Of a stretch of 64,000 nucleotides of DNA, positions 7,256 to 16,600 are shown piece after piece. The DNA is from Saccostrea echinata. Lineage: Eukaryota. Each line of letters begins with the position of its first letter. Within the stretch, counting starts at the first letter, position 1. The notes under the pieces are model-generated. The model saw only the letters and a program-made list of their open reading frames with translations, was not told the DNA's origin and did no database searches. The position numbers and the translations under genes were made by a program. The DNA is taken from positions 1,302,001 through 1,366,000 of the forward strand of contig NW_026889791.1 of assembly GCF_033153115.1 (NCBI RefSeq), read 5' to 3'.

Positions 7256-7620
7256 TTATGCATATGCAAATTTATTCATTGAATATCCTGCAGCTGGACC
7301 TCCTATTGCTTGGACGGGTTGAATTGGAAAGGGGGCAGGGCCTGACATAATGGCGGGACCACCAGCATGGATTCCAGCTCCTCCCCCTATAAAACCTCCT
7401 CCTATGGAGGCCACAGGACCACCTGCGTGAATTCCAGCCCCTCCAAAGCCACCTCCAATAGAAGCGACTGGACCACCTACATGAATACCAGGTCCACCTC
7501 CTATTGAGGCCACGGGGCCACCTCCTCCTATGAAACCTCCTCCAATGGCACCTCCTGGGCCGCCGCCAATTAAACCAGCCCCGCCCCCTATGAATCCCCC
7601 TCCTTCTTTACCTTTGGAGT
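7256..7620 (-). CDS. Exon 16 (terminal coding exon), Gly-rich repeat domain
   Basis: ACAACAG acceptor (weak pyrimidine tract) in frame with ORF 7256..7513; GGGFIGGG, GGPVASIGGG and GIH(A/V)GGP repeats; TAA stop. Confidence 0.9.
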
Positions 7621-10600
7621 CTGTTGTGTGTTTTCAGAGAGTAATTATATTGCGCAAAAATTCCATATGTATTAAAAATATTGTTTACAATTTAAACTTC
7701 CTATTTCATCCTTTTGTTTTATTGCTTGGTTCACATATTTGTTATCTTCAAATACTTAAGTATTTTTAATCTCTAGAACAATTAAAGCTTGAAAAAGAAA
7801 TTCGCTCATTTGAATATCTTTTTCTCAAATCAAAAAATACATTCATTGTGTATTCTTAAATGCCCAATGTAAAAAATAAATATATCTTTGTGTATCATGA
7901 TTTATGGCGGTTAACTAATCTTACAAAAGGAATCCTTCCAAGGTTAAAATTTGAATTAGGATCGTATTCTTGTCTCATGACTATAGGAAGAATCGATTTC
8001 AGTTCATAAGAATGCCAAAAAGCGAAGTAAATCGCAAATGATTAAGAGAATGTAAAAACTTACCATAACCACCGTGGGCCTTAGCAACGGGGACGTGGAT
8101 TTTCTTCCTATCAATAACGGGAAATTCAACTCCAACAGTCTTTACATTTGCAACTGAAAGAGATTAGACAAAAATATAAAGATTTAAAGATTAGGAGGAA
8201 CAAGGTGTAAAATGTTGCAATATTACAAACCATACAGTACCACCTAAGAGGTGTTACGTTTTCACATAGTATACCTGCGACGGGCTCTGAAAAATAAAAG
8301 AAAACAAAAATTAGACATTACATTAGAACCAATAATCCATTAAAAATATTGTTAATTTCTATCACATGTATACTCCTTTATCCAGTGGATATAGTCAAAT
8401 GATATTGTTATCAAATCCTCAGTTGTGGTCTCACAGTAAACGAATTTGATATAAGGATGAATTCATTATAACCCTATTTGGTGTAACTGTGTTACACTGT
8501 ACCTTTCCTGACCCTGTGGATGTGTTTGAAGATGTCTACTGGGATCTTTTTGACGACCAGTCTGGGTTGTGGAACGTTCTTGAACACTATGAGGAATAGA
8601 AGTTAAAACCTTGTAAAACGTGTTAATTCAGAGTACAGTGAACCTTCTGTCATCTGGACCTTTCTCCGTTGAAATAAAATTTGTAGAGAACAGAATAAAT
8701 TATATCTACCAATTATGTAATAAGTGATAAGCTTCATTAACCTGGACGATCCGCTATTTAAAATAACGCCCAGGTTAACAGGCTAGGGCTGTACAATATA
8801 ATGGTAGATACTAAATTTAATCTCAATGTCAACTAAAAAGAATCTCAAAAAAAAAAGAGATTTACAAAAGGACCTTTTTACATTGTTCAAGCATTGTACA
8901 AATCATTCATTTGAAAAAAGGTTATAAAGATTACTAGATCCTCTGTGATCTTGCTAGGTTTTTTTTTTTCTTTTTGGGATGCCAAGATTTCCTAAATATT
9001 ACAAAAACAATACAAAAAAATTCAAAAGAACATTTAAGTGGGTAACTTACCATGCTCAGTAATTGGCACTGGGACGGGCTGTTTCTCTGAAAGGTAAAAT
9101 TAAAAAAATTAATTTATTAAGTTCATTTCTAAAATGACCATCAGTAAAATACTTTTTAAAGATGATAAAATATGTTTTAGAGATAAACCAGGGACAATGG
9201 TGTGTTACTGGTTTTAAAGAAGAAATGTTTTTGCTATTGCACCATCATGTTCTTTCTAATTCCATTTAGATGCAGAGTGTAAATATGAATATAACAATAT
9301 TACACTCTTATTAATGATAGAAAATATAACTTTATCTTTTTTCTAATATTTGATTAGCAAGTGTTATCATGGTTTCAAACAAACACAAATTACTAATCCT
9401 AACTTTTTTCACTACATTATTGTGTCGACTGCAGAGGAGAGCGACACTAAGGGATTTTGCCCGGCGTCTATTTCTTTGTCCGTTTGTCACATCTTATATC
9501 TCGAGAACTGTACGGGGTAAGGATTTGATATTTTGCACATTTATTGCTTGGAACTACAGCTTTTTTTAAATGACCATGGTTACCGACTTCCTGACCCCTG
9601 ACCTTGACCTTTGACCTTCTCTTCCAAATATTTTATAATACCGATAAACAGCATATTTTTCACATTTAAGAGGTAAGTCTACGCTATTTAGTGTGTGCAC
9701 TGTTTGTCATAAAACATAACGAAAAATACCAGCGTTAGAATCCACTTGACCTTGACCTTTGATCTACTTTGCAAAAAATACTCTGGAAGCTTAATTTTAC
9801 GTATGTCTTTTGAATTTTGAAAGGAGGGAAGGGGTTTTATTAATTAGCATTCATTAGACCTCATGATACTGCACTTTGAAACTGTATGCCGATAAGTTTT
9901 CACACAAACTTATAATTAAATACTATAAAAATACATCGGCATCGGTATTCTTCAATTGATCGTGTAGGATCACAATTGCAGTAAAGACAGAGTGAAATCT
10001 CATTTTGAGTGTTGTTGGAATCACGTATAAATAAAATGAAAAATAGTTATTTCTAAAAATTTCAATTTAATTTTTCATTTGAGGTTTGAGGAACTATACT
10101 TTCTTGTCAGATTCTATTGCAGTCTTATACTATCCGTGAATTTTGTTTTCTTTCCAGACAAAACAAATGCCTGAACTATAATGCTAGTAATAAATAAATA
10201 GTTGACCACTTTTAGACACATGCGTTCTTTGGAACACTCTTGTTTAGTTGTTGTTGTTGTTTTTTTTTTTTTTTTTTTTTTTGGGGGGGGGGGGTATTTT
10301 CCTTCAAGAAATACATTTGATCCATTAATATTAAGATCCATTTACTATTGGCAGAACATAATAAAAGTTTGTAAACTGACTATCAAAATAAAATAAAGGC
10401 TGCTATATTTAATCTAGCTATAAATATTAATTATTTTGTAATCATGGAGCTTTTATTCATTGTTATCTCAGTTTTTGCATGTCATATGTACTAATTGTGA
10501 CGCTTTCTTTATTTTTGGTAATTCTTGTCATACTTACTAATTGTGACTCTTTCCTCGAACACTGGTTTGGGTCTGAATACTGAAAATGAATTTTAATAAT

Positions 10601-13600
10601 GATTAAATTCATAACTTTAAAAACAAAAAAGTGAACACAGTCTATTATGGAAATGTAAACGAAAGATTTCTGAATTCAAAATATATGTATAATTATTAAA
10701 CTAAAAGTCATTGTACAGTAAAACTCAATTATACGGTATTCACTGGGACTTCGAATTTTAATTCGTTTGAGCTGCGAGAATCTTTATATCTGAATAAAGG
10801 AGCATAGTGAAAAATTGACTATGGGATTCCTCATAACCGGGCATTCCTATTAACCAAGTTCTTAATAACCTAGTTTCACCGTAATTCTTAATTACATGCA
10901 CTGTTCATTGAGCAAACGTCCTTACTTTTATTTTCTTTGAAAACAGTCTTCTTTTTGATAACAATTTTTGGGTACGGTTGATCAACATGTACTGGTCTGA
11001 CGACTGAAAGAGAAGTAAAATGAAAGTAAAAATAAAAGTCAATCCGAAAGCAAAAGATATTATTGATATTAAAATTAAAAATCAATGGAAGACATTCTAC
11101 TAATTCCTTCTTTTGACCTTCAAAGATTAACCTTATATGTTTAAAGAATGAATTTTCAAATTAAACAACAATTAGATAAATTAATTAATTTTGTTGAAGT
11201 CAGAAAGAATGTTGTTAAGCTCTGTTTGTTGCCTTCGGTTAAATGGTTTCACCTGTTCTGACTTTGTGGATTGGAGTTGGGACATCGACTGAAAAGAGAT
11301 AAACGAAAAATGTATAAAAGATCCAACCTTTATTAAATCCCAAGGTTTCTTTACATGGTTTATTGATAAAAAATAAAAAAAAAAAAAAAAAAACAATCGT
11401 GCCAAAAGAGATATACATGCAATCTCATGTCATCTTTTATTAAAATGCAAATTGCAAATTTTGTGCTGCATTAAGTTTATTTTGGCATAACAAGAATCAA
11501 CAATTAAAAAAAAATCACATCATTCTTCAAATTTACCTGTTTTGTGTACATCGAATTTCTTAACAACTTCAACTGGCTTGATAACTGAAGAGAAAAGAAA
11601 TTGCAAATCAAAATGTATTTTTTAGTCTTTGTGTGTGTGTGTGTGTTCTTTGGGGTATATATTGTATTTTGTAGTTGTGGTCGAAAAGTCATATCTGCAT
11701 GAAATTAGGCAAACATTACTGAAATATAGAGTTATCTTTTTATTTCTCTCTCTCTCTCTCTTAAGGAAGGGAGGATGACAAGGGTTTGTTTTCTATTATA
11801 CAGCAGTATAAAAAAAAATAAATAACTTTACAGAATTAAAAAGGTTATACATGTACAGCTTATAAATTCTACTTACTTGTGTGCTTCCTGATGAATGGTT
11901 TGTCATAAATGTCTGAAATTGAAAATATAAATCAAGGTCACATCTGGCAAATGGTGATAGCGATAAAATGTAAGCCAATGTGATATTTTGAAACATAAAA
12001 TTGTGACAATAAAATTCAAGGTTACTTATTGTAAAGGGTTATATATTTACTATACGTATTTAAACCAAAGTGATTCTTAGATATTTTTATGCCCCCGTAA
12101 TCGAAGATTCGGGGCATATAGTTTTAGCCCTGTCCGTTTGTCTGCCTCTGTCTGTCTGTCCGCAAAAACTTTAATCTTGCCAGTAACTTTTGATTGGTTG
12201 GAGCTATGGCTTTCATATTTCACATGTGTATTTCTTGTTACAAAACCCTTCTTTGGTACCATTATACTTTGCCTTTTGACCTTGACCTTGGAGTTTGACC
12301 CACTTTTGCAAAATGTTATGAGACTTTAACCTTGGCCATAACTTTTGAACGGTTGAAGCTAGGGCTTTCAACCTTCAGATGTGTATTCCTTGTTACACGA
12401 CCTTCCTTTAAAATCCAACAACGTTGACCCATTTGACCTGTATCTTGGAGTTTGACCTACTGTTGTAAAAAATATAACCTTGGCCATAACTTTTGAACAA
12501 ATTGTGCTAGGGCTTTCATACTTCACATGTGTATTTCGTGTGACAAGACCTTCCTTTTGATACCAACAGCTTTGATCCTTTGACCTCGACCTTGGAGTTT
12601 GACCTACTTTAATTTTGAAAACCTTTTACCTATGACTTTTGAACAGTTAGTGCTCGAGTTTTTATACTTCACATGTGTATTTCTTGTGACAAGTCCATCC
12701 TTGAAATCCAACATCTTTGACCCTTTGACCTTGACCCTAGAGTTTGACCTATTTTTTGAAAAACTTTAACCTCTGTCATAACTTTTAAACAGTTAATGCT
12801 TTCAAACTTCACATATGCATTCCTTGTGACAAGAACTTCCTTCAAACACCAACATCTTTGACCCTTTAACCTTGACCTTGGAGTTTGACCTACTTTTGAA
12901 AAACTTAAAGTTTGGTCATAACTTCTGATGTTAGGGCTTTCATACGTCACATGTAAATTTTTTGCGAAAAGACCTTTCTTTGGAGACCAACAGTTTTGAC
13001 ATTGACATTGACCTTGGAGTTTGACCTAGTTTTAAGAAATTTTAACCTTGGCCATACTATTTGAACGTTTTGTTCTAAGGTTTTCACATTTCACGATAAT
13101 ATGTATCACTTGTAACATTACCTTTTCTCGGGCACCATTTAACCTTGACCTTGCCGTTTTACTTAGTTTGAAAAAACAACTTTAACCTTTGCCTTAACTT
13201 TTTAACGGTTGGTGCTAGGGCTTTCATATTTCACAGGTATATTCCTCGAGAAAAGAATATACTTTGGGTACCTACATATTTGATCTCTTGACCTGAAGTT
13301 TGACTTGCATTTGAGAAGCTTTACCCTTCACTGCTATATGGGGGCATCAGTGTTTCGCAAACACATCTTGTATTTATTGTTAAACAATATTATAACAATA
13401 TTAACAAGGTGGCTTAATGTAAGATGTAACTCTGTAACAGTACAAACTATGCAACATACAGTCAACACTTTATAATAAACTTTGTGGTCTATAATCAAAA
13501 GCAGTTAAGATCTTGTGATACATCGAGCTAAAATCTTTAAAATCAAAGAACTGTCAGCAATGAACTGGAATCAGTTAAATTACGATATTCTTGGACTATT

Positions 13601-16600
13601 GCGTTTTCAACTGGTGTTTTTTTTTCACCTTGGATTTGTGTGTTGGGGGGGGGGGGGGGGTAGGAGGTTGGGCGTTGGGGGCTTATCTAGTGTCATTTAG
13701 CTGGTTTAGTTTACTCACATTTCTGTACATGAACTTTGGTCTTTCTGATAATTTTTGGTCCTGAAAGAGAGAAAAAAAAAATAAAGGGTTATGATTTTTT
13801 GACAAAACAACTTAAATACAAGTCAATTTAAAAATGTTAACGTTGACGACTACCAAGCATTGATCCACTTTTAAGCATTCCAAAGAGTATGATGTATATT
13901 AATATATATGAACGACCTTTTTGGAATATCTTACAGAAAATATTTTTATGTTATGGTGTAAGCACACAAAATGTCCATGAAACAAAGAAAAAAACGTTAT
14001 AATTATGTTAATTAATTGAATTTTGGGCGATTCAAAATAAAAAAAAAATCAGCTTCTGGCATACATGAAAACCTTGAAACTTACCGGAGGCATATCTGAC
14101 AGTGGATTCCTTGTAATAGATCTCTTTGTAACACAAATTTCTCTTGAAATGCACGTGCATTTCATAGTAAACATTTTCTCCCAGGAAAACACCTCTGAAT
14201 TTCATGTGAAACCTTCCGAGTAAAATTCAAGTGAGGCACGTGACCGTGTCATTTTGTTATACTTACTTGTGACAATTCTTGGTATCTCGTTGCGTATAAC
14301 TTTGACCTCTTTCTGGACGACCGGAACTTGGTGGATAAGACCAACTGTAAGGCAGATTTAATTAATCATTAATAGGATTATAATCTGAGCAGATATCGGG
14401 AAATCTTAAAGCAGATTTATTTGATTTCGAGTTTAAATGAATGTAAAATTGGGCACTTAATTATTGTCTCCTTTTGTTAATGATAACCAGCTACATATTT
14501 ATTCATTATTTCATTAATGCTCTAATTTTAAAGATTTAAAAAAACTCCTTAAAGAAAGGTATTCAGGCTTTTATTTTTGAATAGATTAAGAGAATTATTT
14601 TATGTTTGAGTCACTACTTACCATGCCTGTGCACGTCATGTGCTACCTCATGGACAGCCTGCTTAGCATGCGCTAAAAAAATACAAAACATAATATTAAG
14701 ATCGCAATTTGATATTTTTGAAGAAATGCGTTTTTAAATTAAAAAAAAACACACTATAATACATTATTCGAATATAACTGTGAAAAAAAAATAAGTCTAA
14801 TACTTACGCACTACATGCACGGATGGCTCTGAAAGGGAAACAGACTAAATATTAAAGTATTGTAAATCGTATTAGGCAGTGGATATGTAATGAATACTAT
14901 AGAATTAATGTATCAGAATAAATTGAATAATCAAACCAAAGTCTGCTATTAATTGAAAGTATATTGAAGGAAATCGGATAATGTAGATAGTGGCTAACTA
15001 TACATACCGAAAGTTCTTTTGTTACGAATATTTGAAAACAATTTCTGAGATTTATTAACAGGGCGAGAGGATGAAATGTTTGAAAATGAAGCAGATTTAA
15101 TAGAGAAATCTGTTGATCAGGTGCTATTAGAAATGTGTGATCAATGGTAGAAAATGGACCTACATAGTACATTTCAAGGTGATTGTGATCTTACACTTTA
15201 TCGTCAGCCTTGCTGGCAGCATTTTTTTTTCTCCATTTATGAAAAAATTGGGTCAATGCTGATCAATTTCATATTTTCCTACATAGCATATTGTAAAAAA
15301 CGTACACGTGGCCTAATTACGGTCCGTAATGACTTGATATATTTATACGCAGTCACGATGCTTTGGGGACATAAAATACATATAAACCTGGCTGGGCATG
15401 CTTTTGTCACCGCATTCGATGTATATTTTGTTAATTGGCAATGGTAATAACGCAGCTGTTCGAGTTATCTCCCGTAGCACTTTTACTATGCTCCCTATTT
15501 AAGACAAACATAATAAAGTACGCAATGCCTTAAGGTCAAGATCTAGTAAATGACTTCAGACTAACTTTTTGGTGCTAGATCCATTATGATGTCATAATTA
15601 ATTTTAACTTTCTTTTTCCCGTACTTTACGGCTTTAGTAGAATTTTGTAGAAAATAAAGTACTTTCCTGGAATTCAATTTGAAATCATGTGAAAAGTAAT
15701 CCCGATACCTATATTCAATTTGATATTATTTTAAAGAAGAGGCCAAGAACATACAAATTATTGTTTTCTGAGAGACTGTAGGCAATCTGGATGTATTTCG
15801 TTGTCTGATATGAAAAAAATCTCCCGTATTCATGACTAGTTTTCTTAATTTTTCATTGAAAATGACAGTTTAAAATATGATTTTTCGTCTTGTTCATCTA
15901 CAAATTACACCTTATTTGACCAAGCTAAAGTTATGAAGCACCATTCAAGGACTTTATTTCTCAAATTTGAGAAATCTGTAGGCACCCTTCGTTTACTAGA
16001 TCTTGACCTTAAAAAGAATAAATATGTCCGAGTACATGTATCACTTTTTAAAGGAAACTATACGTGTAACAAACACATTTACTGACGACAATGTTCAGCT
16101 TTATAAACTTATTTCCTCAACCTTTTTTTAAATTGGATTTTTTGGAAAAGTGTGCGTGTGTGTGTTACATGTATTGAATGCGCGATAAATTAATTAGATC
16201 TTATGTTCTAATATAGCATTCACCGTGTTGCATTTGTAGATGATTTTGTACACACTTATGATAAACAAATATCATCAGAAAAGTAATGTTTTATCCGCAA
16301 ATGATATAAAGCCTTTAATGACATAAAGCGTATTAATGACAGATACATGTAATTAGATAATATCGACCATTAATGATTTAAAAATAAGTTCGATAAAAAT
16401 CAAAGTCACTCATTATTCGATGTTACAATTTGATCATTCATTGAAATTATTTTTTGTCGTCTTAAGTGCAAATGACATATAATAATTAGAGTATATACGA
16501 TTATTGCAGCCCGGAGGACCGGGCTGCTCTATACATATAAGTTTAAGTGTTGGTATATGGGGATTAAGGTGGGAGTAGTTATTCAGAATTAAAGGTTTTC

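What the first reader, a model, noticed from the sequence alone, without database searches (positions are those of the whole stretch)
8064..14828. Two-residue register code: all 23 prolines on odd residues and exons 5-15 all multiples of 6 nt
Seen: in residues 16-233, Pro occurs at 17, 23, 47, 61, 67, 85, 95, 111, 113, 123, 129, 131, 149, 151, 163, 165, 167, 177, 179, 187, 201, 215 and 225. All are odd-numbered; under random parity the chance is about 2^-22. Eleven consecutive exons encode even codon numbers (26, 14, 12, 16, 12, 26, 14, 12, 28, 4, 30), and the odd exons 3+4 sum to 24. The region is rich in beta-branched V/I/T, has no Gly between residues 41 and 211, and has no Cys. Known: in a two-stranded antiparallel beta-ribbon, Pro is tolerated only at the non-H-bonded positions, which recur every second residue. 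Inference: the rod is a very long beta-ribbon, possibly intermolecular because no turn residues are evident. Exon lengths would then be constrained to preserve strand register as well as reading frame. The parity pattern also independently supports the hand-built exon model.
Basis: partly seen in the sequence, partly recalled or inferred. Interest (0 to 1): 0.88.

Follow-up and report, generated by a model that had tools for sequence, protein, structure and literature searches.

The report
Proline register in shell-matrix protein
A bivalve gene for a valine-rich ("alveoline-like") shell-matrix protein places every proline of its 218-residue rod on alternate positions and builds that rod from exons that are multiples of 6 nt; mussel cDNA relatives keep the same proline rule, which points to one long extended strand-like structure.

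Summary
I rebuilt the minus-strand gene as 16 exons with every intron in phase 1, giving 354 aa: signal peptide 1-15, a V/K/P/I/H-rich rod 16-233, and a Gly-rich tail 234-354. All 23 rod prolines fall on odd residues. Exons 5-15 hold 26, 14, 12, 16, 12, 26, 14, 12, 28, 4 and 30 codons. The Gly-rich tail shows no parity (4 odd, 7 even).

The gene is not an unknown kind. Its composition, length and two-domain plan match the valine-rich/"alveoline-like" shell matrix proteins of pearl oysters and mussels.

Two mussel sequences derived from transcripts, printed in paper supplements, obey the same rule. Perna viridis has 27 of 27 prolines in phase over 200 residues. Mytilus californianus has 26 of 27. 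Asp and Thr share the proline phase, while Val and Lys/Arg favour the other phase. Proline gains and losses between the two mussels fall almost only on in-phase sites. The register is therefore family-wide and looks selected.

An extended beta-type strand with one hydrogen-bonding edge blocked is the best reading. The specific two-stranded ribbon is untested. Even exon lengths are better explained by cassette-exon evolution, as in collagen and elastin.

RNA reads, database orthologues and folding of the spliced protein could not be obtained. The scan's two earlier notes concern this same stretch, not other DNA.

The parts
18543..18573 (-). Exon 1: start codon and first 10 residues of the signal peptide, ends in phase 1
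   Evidence: ATG followed by a hydrophobic stretch and a GTAAGT donor
17912..17926 (-). Exon 2 (15 nt): end of the signal peptide, residues 11-15
   Evidence: Pyrimidine-rich tract with CAG acceptor and a GTAAGT donor, phase 1-1
14808..14828 (-). Exon 3, 7 codons, start of the rod (residues 16-22, Pro17)
14622..14672 (-). Exon 4, 17 codons (23-39). Carries the AHDVH-HV motif shared with the mussel homologues
   Evidence: motif compared by eye
14267..14344 (-). Exon 5, 26 codons (40-65). Carries the LIH-VP motif shared with the mussels
13719..13760 (-). Exon 6, 14 codons (66-79)
11877..11912 (-). Exon 7, 12 codons (80-91)
11537..11584 (-). Exon 8, 16 codons (92-107), Pro at exon position 4
11253..11288 (-). 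Exon 9, 12 codons (108-119), Pro at exon positions 4 and 6
10926..11003 (-). Exon 10, 26 codons (120-145)
10538..10579 (-). Exon 11, 14 codons (146-159)
9051..9086 (-). Exon 12, 12 codons (160-171), P-V-P-V-P run
8503..8586 (-). Exon 13, 28 codons (172-199), weak GTACAG donor
8275..8286 (-). Exon 14, a 12-nt micro-exon (200-203, Pro201). It is the least certain exon. Skipping it, or keeping it, both preserve parity; an alternative donor at +9 would not
   Evidence: Strong acceptor and a GTATAC donor. The spacing from its Pro to the following N-V matches the mussel homologue (by eye)
8064..8153 (-). Exon 15, 30 codons (204-233), end of the rod
7256..7620 (-). Exon 16: Gly-rich C-terminal domain (234-354) and the stop codon. 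It has 18-residue internal repeats and no proline parity, so it serves as an internal control
   Evidence: The same rod-plus-Gly-rich plan is seen in the Perna viridis transcript

Best explanation
The locus is a single-copy gene for a secreted valine-rich ('alveoline-like') shell-matrix framework protein. It has a signal peptide, a basic V/K/P/I/H-rich rod of about 218 residues, and a Gly-rich tail.

The rod is held in one unbroken two-residue register. One phase carries Pro, Asp, Thr and Ala. The other is dominated by Val, Lys and Arg.

The most likely reading is an extended beta-type chain. The Pro-bearing residues all face the same hydrogen-bonding edge, which is thereby blocked. The other edge stays free to pair with a second chain or another matrix component. 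This would give ribbon-like insoluble assemblies rather than wide sheets.

The gene is built from phase-1 cassette exons that behave as repeat units. Several begin with a hydrophobic, x, basic, Pro pattern. Unit lengths change in steps of two codons. Duplication, loss or skipping of an exon therefore keeps both frame and register. This is a period-2 counterpart of the 9-bp rule of collagen exons.

Shown: the parity, its specificity to the rod, its recurrence in mussel cDNAs, and the exon arithmetic.

Inferred: the beta conformation, edge blocking, the partner, and the evolutionary route.
For: - Exon model, proline parity and exon arithmetic.
- Internal control: in the Gly-rich tail Pro is 4 odd and 7 even.
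- Other residues are phase-biased as well. The small/polar set D, T, A, S, G, N is 24 to 9 towards the Pro phase (p = 0.001). K+R is 13 to 33.
- The same biases appear in M. californianus by hand count: V 14/29, K+R 9/26, D 10/0, T 7/1. In Perna all 8 Asp are in phase.
- Between the two mussels, 9 proline gains or losses fall on in-phase sites. Two are off phase: one sits beside an in-phase Pro, the other at the rod end.
- A one-residue indel between the mussels occurs only N-terminal to the locked core. Odd indels therefore do arise but are not kept inside the core.
- Family identity. Rod composition is V 21%, K 15%, P 11%, I 10%, H 8% over 218 residues. Pinctada Alv is V 23%, P 13%, K 12%, I 10%, H 8% over 217 mature residues, with ~80% predicted strand, and is found in the insoluble matrix.
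- The Perna homologue has the same rod-plus-Gly-rich plan, and its whole-protein composition is G 18%, V 17%, P 11%, against 15/15/10 here.
- A mussel homologue is specific to the mantle rim.
- Pro is known to be tolerated at non-H-bonded edge sites.
Against: - There is no structural evidence for this protein. Folding of the spliced product was left out, and no CD, FTIR or diffraction data exist for the family in the papers I read.
- Only about a fifth of the in-phase positions are Pro, so edge blocking would be partial.
- Val and Lys/Arg share one phase, which is not a classical amphipathic strand pattern.
- An uninterrupted strand of about 70 nm has no solved precedent that I could cite.
- The exon junctions here lack RNA support.
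- The two mussels are close relatives, so they amount to little more than one independent replicate.
- The mussel counts were made by hand.
Confidence: 0.55

Rival explanations
1. Local rule plus history. The rod is a string of short extended or PPII-like V-P segments. Proline placement is constrained only relative to near neighbours. The long-range parity survives because indels arise mainly by slippage of 6-nt P-V units and by gain or loss of whole even-length exons. No single global structure or long H-bond ladder is needed.
For: X-P-X-P runs are common, with 5 clusters in 218 residues. Exon units differ by two codons, and exon starts resemble each other. Self-comparison scores better at even than at odd offsets. 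(XP)n rods such as TonB are extended without being sheets (from my own knowledge, not tested here).
Against: Proline turnover by substitution between the mussels is still phase-specific across the whole rod. Asp and Thr are phase-locked far from any Pro run. A one-residue indel exists just outside the core, so odd indels do arise. There is no detectable tandem repeat or 6-nt periodic tract in most of the rod.
Confidence: 0.25
2. Folded repetitive beta architecture. Each exon-sized unit of 12-16 residues forms a strand-turn element of a meander or solenoid. Pro, Asp and Asn mark the turns, and even unit lengths keep the pattern.
For: Exons behave as units of 12, 14 and 16 codons, with 26, 28 and 30 as possible fusions. 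Turn-forming residues (P, D, T, N) share one phase. ~80% strand is predicted for Alv.
Against: Unit lengths vary, which stacks poorly in a solenoid. Turns normally reset strand parity, so a strict global register is not expected. Gly is almost absent from the rod. The 80-residue module similarity is not significant.
Confidence: 0.12
3. Artefact. The parity comes from how the exons were picked by hand, and the real mRNA differs.
For: Exons 13 and 14 have weak donors, and an alternative exon-14 donor at +9 would shift the last two prolines. A phase-compatible 31-codon open stretch exists at 14085-14177.
Against: Every chosen site has a strong pyrimidine tract with CAG/TAG, and nearly all have GT[AG]AG-type donors. 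In-frame alternatives are weak. The resulting protein matches a known family in length, composition and domain plan. Transcript-derived homologues show the same parity. The 14085-14177 stretch has a poor acceptor and an unrelated Tyr/Cys-rich composition.
Confidence: 0.04

Closest known systems
Valine-rich / alveoline-like shell matrix protein (Pinctada fucata Alv, GenBank KR872410; P. margaritifera H2A0K6; mussel 'alveoline-like' and Crassostrea virginica 'valine-rich protein-like' proteins)
   Same: All have a signal peptide and a strongly basic rod of about 217-218 residues rich in V, P, K, I and H, with 'VP repeats' and almost no Gly or Cys. Short motifs are shared with the mussel sequences. 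The Perna form has a Gly-rich C-terminal domain. Family members are expressed in mantle or mantle rim and are found in the insoluble shell matrix.
   Different: The papers I read describe only 'VP repeats' and predicted strand. None states a two-residue register or an exon-length rule. Pinctada Alv as cloned (233 aa) lacks the Gly-rich tail. No scored alignment to named members could be run here.
Articulins and alveolins of protist membrane skeletons
   Same: They are valine- and proline-rich with Pro on alternate positions. Charged residues alternate in register with V and P. They have partial beta-sheet content and self-assemble into filaments and sheets (PMC2120578). This is the origin of the name 'alveoline-like'.
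   Different: Their register comes from 24-33 tandem copies of a 12-residue motif, and they are cytoplasmic. The present rod has no detectable tandem repeat, carries a signal peptide, and does not match the alveolin Pfam model.
Cassette-exon genes of fibrous matrix proteins (fibrillar collagens with exons in multiples of 9 bp; tropoelastin with all exons split in the same phase)
   Same: All introns are in one phase. Exon lengths are multiples of (peptide period x 3 nt), so exon duplication, loss or skipping keeps both frame and structural register (exon data; collagen and elastin rules from established knowledge).
   Different: The period is 2 residues (6 nt) instead of 3 (9 nt). There is no sequence relationship.
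(X-Pro)n rods such as the TonB Glu-Pro/Lys-Pro region
   Same: Alternating proline gives a stiff extended chain (from my own knowledge, not tested here).
   Different: Those are short, locally periodic tracts with no long-range parity through non-repetitive sequence.

Membership tests
Valine-rich / alveoline-like shell matrix proteins | N-terminal signal peptide, secreted | tested here: met
   Residues 1-15 are hydrophobic and end in A-L-A before Glu16. This was judged by inspection; no signal-peptide predictor was available.
Valine-rich / alveoline-like shell matrix proteins | Basic region of about 217 residues with roughly V 20-23%, P 11-13%, K 12-15%, and very little Gly, Asp, Glu or Cys | tested here: met
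   The rod is 218 residues: V 21.1%, K 14.7%, P 10.6%, I 9.6%, H 7.8%, G 1.8%, no Cys. The Alv table in PMC6095885 gives comparable values.
Valine-rich / alveoline-like shell matrix proteins | Scored sequence similarity to a named member | tested here: inconclusive
Database searches with exon 16 were blank.
Valine-rich / alveoline-like shell matrix proteins | Gly-rich C-terminal domain after the rod (Perna / C. virginica-type members) | tested here: met
   Exon 16 joins in phase to exon 15. The mature protein is G 15%, V 15%, P 10%. Perna CL4671.Contig1 is G 18.3%, V 16.7%, P 11.3%.
Valine-rich / alveoline-like shell matrix proteins | Mantle expression and presence in the shell matrix | not testable with these tools
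No proteome for this organism was identified.
Articulin / alveolin membrane-skeleton proteins | Tandem 12-residue VPV-type repeats, or a match to the alveolin Pfam model (PF12314) | tested here: not met
   No tandem repeat is found in the rod exons. There is no significant self-similarity at any fixed offset. Pfam is blank on the exons. PF12314 finds nothing at this locus in the whole genome.
Articulin / alveolin membrane-skeleton proteins | Cytoplasmic protein without a signal peptide | tested here: not met
   A signal peptide is present.
Cassette-exon fibrous-protein genes (collagen/elastin type) | All introns in the same phase and exon lengths a multiple of the peptide period | tested here: met
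   All 15 introns are in phase 1. Exons 5-15 are all multiples of 6 nt, and exons 3+4 sum to 72 nt.

The most novel reading that the evidence does not exclude
A non-repetitive rod of more than 200 residues is kept in one uninterrupted two-residue register under purifying selection. It forms a continuous beta strand about 70 nm long, with one hydrogen-bonding edge capped by proline, that pairs through the free edge. The rule is conserved from mussels to this bivalve. The gene enforces it through phase-1 exons in multiples of 6 nt, a period-2 counterpart of the collagen Gly-X-Y / 9-bp exon rule. This would be a new structural principle for insoluble biomineral frameworks.
Probability: 0.3. Interest if true: 0.75.

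Novelty: new member of a known kind. Interest (0 to 1): 0.55.

Why it matters
Valine-rich/alveoline-like proteins are among the most abundant insoluble components of calcitic prism layers in pearl oysters and mussels, yet their structure is unknown.

A strict, conserved two-residue register gives a concrete model that can be proved wrong: an extended strand with one blocked edge. It also gives simple handles for testing it, such as proline phase-shift mutants, rod length by EM, and fibre diffraction.

The rule can serve as an annotation check for these micro-exon genes, which are easily missed or mis-spliced.

The 6-nt exon rule adds a second example, beside collagen, of gene architecture that preserves a structural period as well as the reading frame.

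Tried and rejected
- **Database homologues.** Exon 16 (120 aa) found nothing in the search for homologous proteins or in the 1.84-billion representative library. Its Gly-rich composition and the length window probably explain the blanks. The rod exons are too short (30 codons or fewer) for those tools.
- **Pfam.** Five exons gave nothing.
- **Own-genome searches.** Exons 5, 10, 13, 15 and 16 found only the locus itself, so no paralogue was available for comparison.
- **Pinctada primers.** Published Alv primers are absent from the window and the genome, so this is not P. fucata Alv itself.
- **Alveolin model.** PF12314 has no hit at the locus.
- **80-residue module duplication.** Ungapped similarity of exons 5-9 to exons 10-13 is not significant (p = 0.10; 0.23 with a parity-preserving shuffle). 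The matching exon sizes remain unexplained.
- **Candidate extra exon 14085-14177.** It is 31 codons and phase-compatible. I rejected it because of its weak acceptor and unrelated composition, and because it would break a rule that the cDNA homologues keep.
- **Pinctada sequences.** They could not be read: PNAS 2012 is not held, and the Alv paper's sequence is only in figures.
- The joined spliced protein was used only inside scripts, for counting and for one local comparison against the window itself. It was not sent to any homology, family, structure or complex tool.
- **Inverted-repeat scan of the introns.** It gave only homopolymer matches.
Full report
**What is at the locus.** The window is AT-rich eukaryotic DNA with no long ORFs. 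On the minus strand, short open stretches are flanked by strong splice signals: a pyrimidine tract with CAG or TAG upstream and mostly GTAAGT or GTGAGT downstream. These chain into one gene. The model has 16 exons from 18573 down to 7256, every intron is in phase 1, and the CDS is 1065 nt. An earlier scan note on the same stretch gives the same extent. The product is 354 aa: a 15-residue signal peptide, a rod (16-233) rich in Val, Lys, Pro, Ile and His, and a Gly-rich tail (234-354) encoded by the single long exon 16. The tail contains 18-residue repeats. The gene is single-copy in its 923-Mb assembly at the sensitivity of exon-by-exon searches, and no related exons occur elsewhere in the window.

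**Check of the observation.** The 23 rod prolines are all on odd residues (binomial p = 2.4e-7). Because prolines cluster in X-P-X-P runs, I merged them into 17 independent clusters, and p is still 1.5e-5. Exons 5-15 encode 26, 14, 12, 16, 12, 26, 14, 12, 28, 4 and 30 codons. Exons 3 and 4 encode 7 and 17. Gly is found in the rod only at 41, 211, 231 and 232, and Cys is absent. The Gly-rich tail is a useful internal control: its 11 prolines are 4 odd and 7 even, so the rule belongs to the rod and not to the gene or the codon usage.

**Is the parity an artefact of exon picking?** For every exon I listed in-frame alternative acceptors and donors within 30 nt. The alternatives lie inside exons and lack pyrimidine tracts. 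The only credible alternative that would break parity is a GTGAAA donor 9 nt beyond the 12-nt exon 14. That donor lacks both the G at -1 and the G at +5, whereas the chosen site has CAG before GT. A 31-codon open stretch at 14085-14177 is phase-compatible. However, it has a poor acceptor and a Tyr/Cys-rich composition unlike the rest of the protein.

**What the protein is.** Pfam and the large protein libraries gave nothing for the pieces that could be submitted. The literature did.
- The Pinctada fucata 'alveoline-like' protein Alv is a valine-rich, extremely basic prismatic-layer matrix protein. It has a 16-residue signal peptide and 217 mature residues: V 23.0%, P 12.9%, K 12.0%, I 10.1%, R 8.3%, H 7.8%. 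It shows 'VP repeats' and about 80% predicted beta strand, and it is found in the EDTA-insoluble matrix (PMC6095885).
- The rod here is 218 residues with V 21.1%, K 14.7%, P 10.6%, I 9.6%, H 7.8% and R 6.4%.
- Mussel fibrous-prism proteomes contain abundant 'alveoline-like' Val/Pro/Lys-rich proteins (PMC4517812).
- A Perna viridis transcript has the same two-domain plan of rod plus Gly-rich tail. [quoted passage not shown] The mature protein here is 15.0%, 15.0% and 10.0%.
- A homologue in Mytilisepta virgata is specific to the mantle rim (PMC5549309).
- By eye, short motifs are shared with the mussel sequences: AHDVH-HV, LIH-VP, and [FY]DVH followed by P-x-P.

The locus is therefore a member of a known, though structurally uncharacterised, family. 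It is not P. fucata Alv itself, because published Alv primers are absent from the window and the genome.

**Independent replication of the register.** The supplements print two transcript-derived mussel sequences, and these owe nothing to the exon model. I counted their prolines by hand in two ways: by position in blocks of ten, and by the spacing between successive prolines.
- In M. californianus gi|212812802, Pro lies at 31, 33, 41, 55, 75, 87, 91, 93, 103, 119, 129, 131, 137, 157, 161, 163, 171, 173, 175, 191, 193, 195, 209, 213, 221 and 231. All are odd. The only off-phase proline in that span is P102, next to P103.
- In Perna viridis CL4671.Contig1, the 27 prolines from 34 to 234 are all even. 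These form 22 clusters, or about 5e-7 for a hypothesis fixed in advance. The off-phase prolines are the middle one of an N-terminal PPP, P27, and P237 at the rod end.
- The two mussels align without gaps over the core at an offset of 3. Sites where only one of them has proline number nine in phase and two off phase (P102 and P237).
- The two mussels differ by a one-residue indel, but only between the N-terminal PPP and the first in-phase proline. Odd indels do arise, and they are not retained in the core.

**The register is more than proline.** In the window protein, Asp (6 to 1), Thr (8 to 2) and Ala (6 to 1) share the proline phase. The small/polar set D, T, A, S, G, N is 24 to 9 (p = 0.001 after allowing for the positions taken by Pro). 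Lys+Arg (13 to 33) and Val (15 to 31) lean to the other phase. Hand counts give the same picture in M. californianus residues 31-230: V 14 to 29, K+R 9 to 26, D 10 to 0, T 7 to 1. All eight Asp of the Perna rod are in phase. Rod self-comparison also scores better at even than at odd offsets. Two chemically distinct alternating position classes are thus conserved between distant bivalves.

**Interpretation.** In an extended strand, successive residues alternate both in side-chain direction and in the direction of their NH and CO groups. Proline lacks the NH and is known to be tolerated at non-H-bonded edge sites of antiparallel sheets (PMC2134964, citing Wouters & Curmi). A chain whose prolines all sit in one phase therefore has one edge repeatedly blocked and the other free. 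This fits a two-stranded ribbon or one-sided docking onto another matrix component, and it fits an insoluble framework protein.

The claim that no turn residues are present is too strong, since Asn, Asp and Pro are available. Two rivals remain. One is short locally constrained segments whose common phase is kept by 6-nt slippage and by whole-exon gain or loss. The other is a folded strand-turn repeat.

**The exon rule.** The protein register does not depend on intron positions, so even exon lengths are not a structural requirement of a constitutively spliced gene. What the data show is that exons behave as units. Five consecutive exons (8-12) carry Pro at exon position 4, and others carry it at position 2 or 6. 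Several exons end in basic-x-Thr. Lengths are 12, 14 and 16 codons, or sums of these. This is the cassette-exon architecture of fibrous matrix genes. Established knowledge supplies the parallels: collagen exons are multiples of 9 bp and start with Gly, and tropoelastin exons are all split in the same phase. Here the unit is 6 nt. The name of the oyster hit ('isoform X4') hints at alternative splicing, which such exons would tolerate without loss of register. I could not test this.

Ungapped similarity has p = 0.10, or 0.23 with a parity-preserving shuffle. It rests on exon sizes alone.

**Comparison with known systems.** The closest functional analogue is the articulin/alveolin group. These have 12-residue VPVP--V-V-V- repeats, charges alternating in register, about 30% beta sheet by infrared, and filament formation (PMC2120578). 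The present protein works like these in its period-2 V/P pattern, but it fails their membership tests. It has no tandem repeat, no match to the alveolin model, and it carries a signal peptide.

**Verdict.** It is not stated in any of the family papers I read. The gene itself is an ordinary member of that family. The beta-ribbon mechanism is plausible but unproven.

Noticed in passing
window 12323-13094 (intron between exons 6 and 7): A tandem array of about 5.4 copies of a 146-148-bp unit rich in TTGACC motifs. Similar TTGACC-rich sequence lies at about 9540-9790 in another intron. It is probably a bivalve satellite or MITE-type element.
   Followed up: partly
window 7384-7491 and 7520-7556 (exon 16): The Gly-rich tail is internally repeated with a 54-nt (18-residue) unit and a 15-nt unit. 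Its prolines show no parity.
   Followed up: partly
window 14085-14177, minus strand: A phase-compatible open stretch of 31 codons inside intron 5, with a GTAAGT donor but a poor acceptor and a Tyr/Cys-rich translation. It is probably not an exon, but this is unverified without RNA.
   Followed up: partly
window 7925-7980, minus strand: A short ATG-initiated open stretch ending in a GTAAGA donor in phase 1, between exons 15 and 16. It could in principle splice to exon 16, but it has no signal-peptide character.
   Followed up: no
window 10260-10296 and about 13640-13665: Long homopolymer runs in introns: T(24) followed by G(13), and a G run of about 20. These may be assembly-sensitive spots.
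   Followed up: no
PMC4660305 supplement, Alveoline-F primer: The qPCR primer used for P. fucata 'Alveoline-like' KP852356 reads as a Gly-rich peptide (I-G-V-G-G-P-L). This suggests that transcript also carries Gly-rich sequence, although the cloned Alv ORF (233 aa) has only 1.4% Gly.
   Followed up: no
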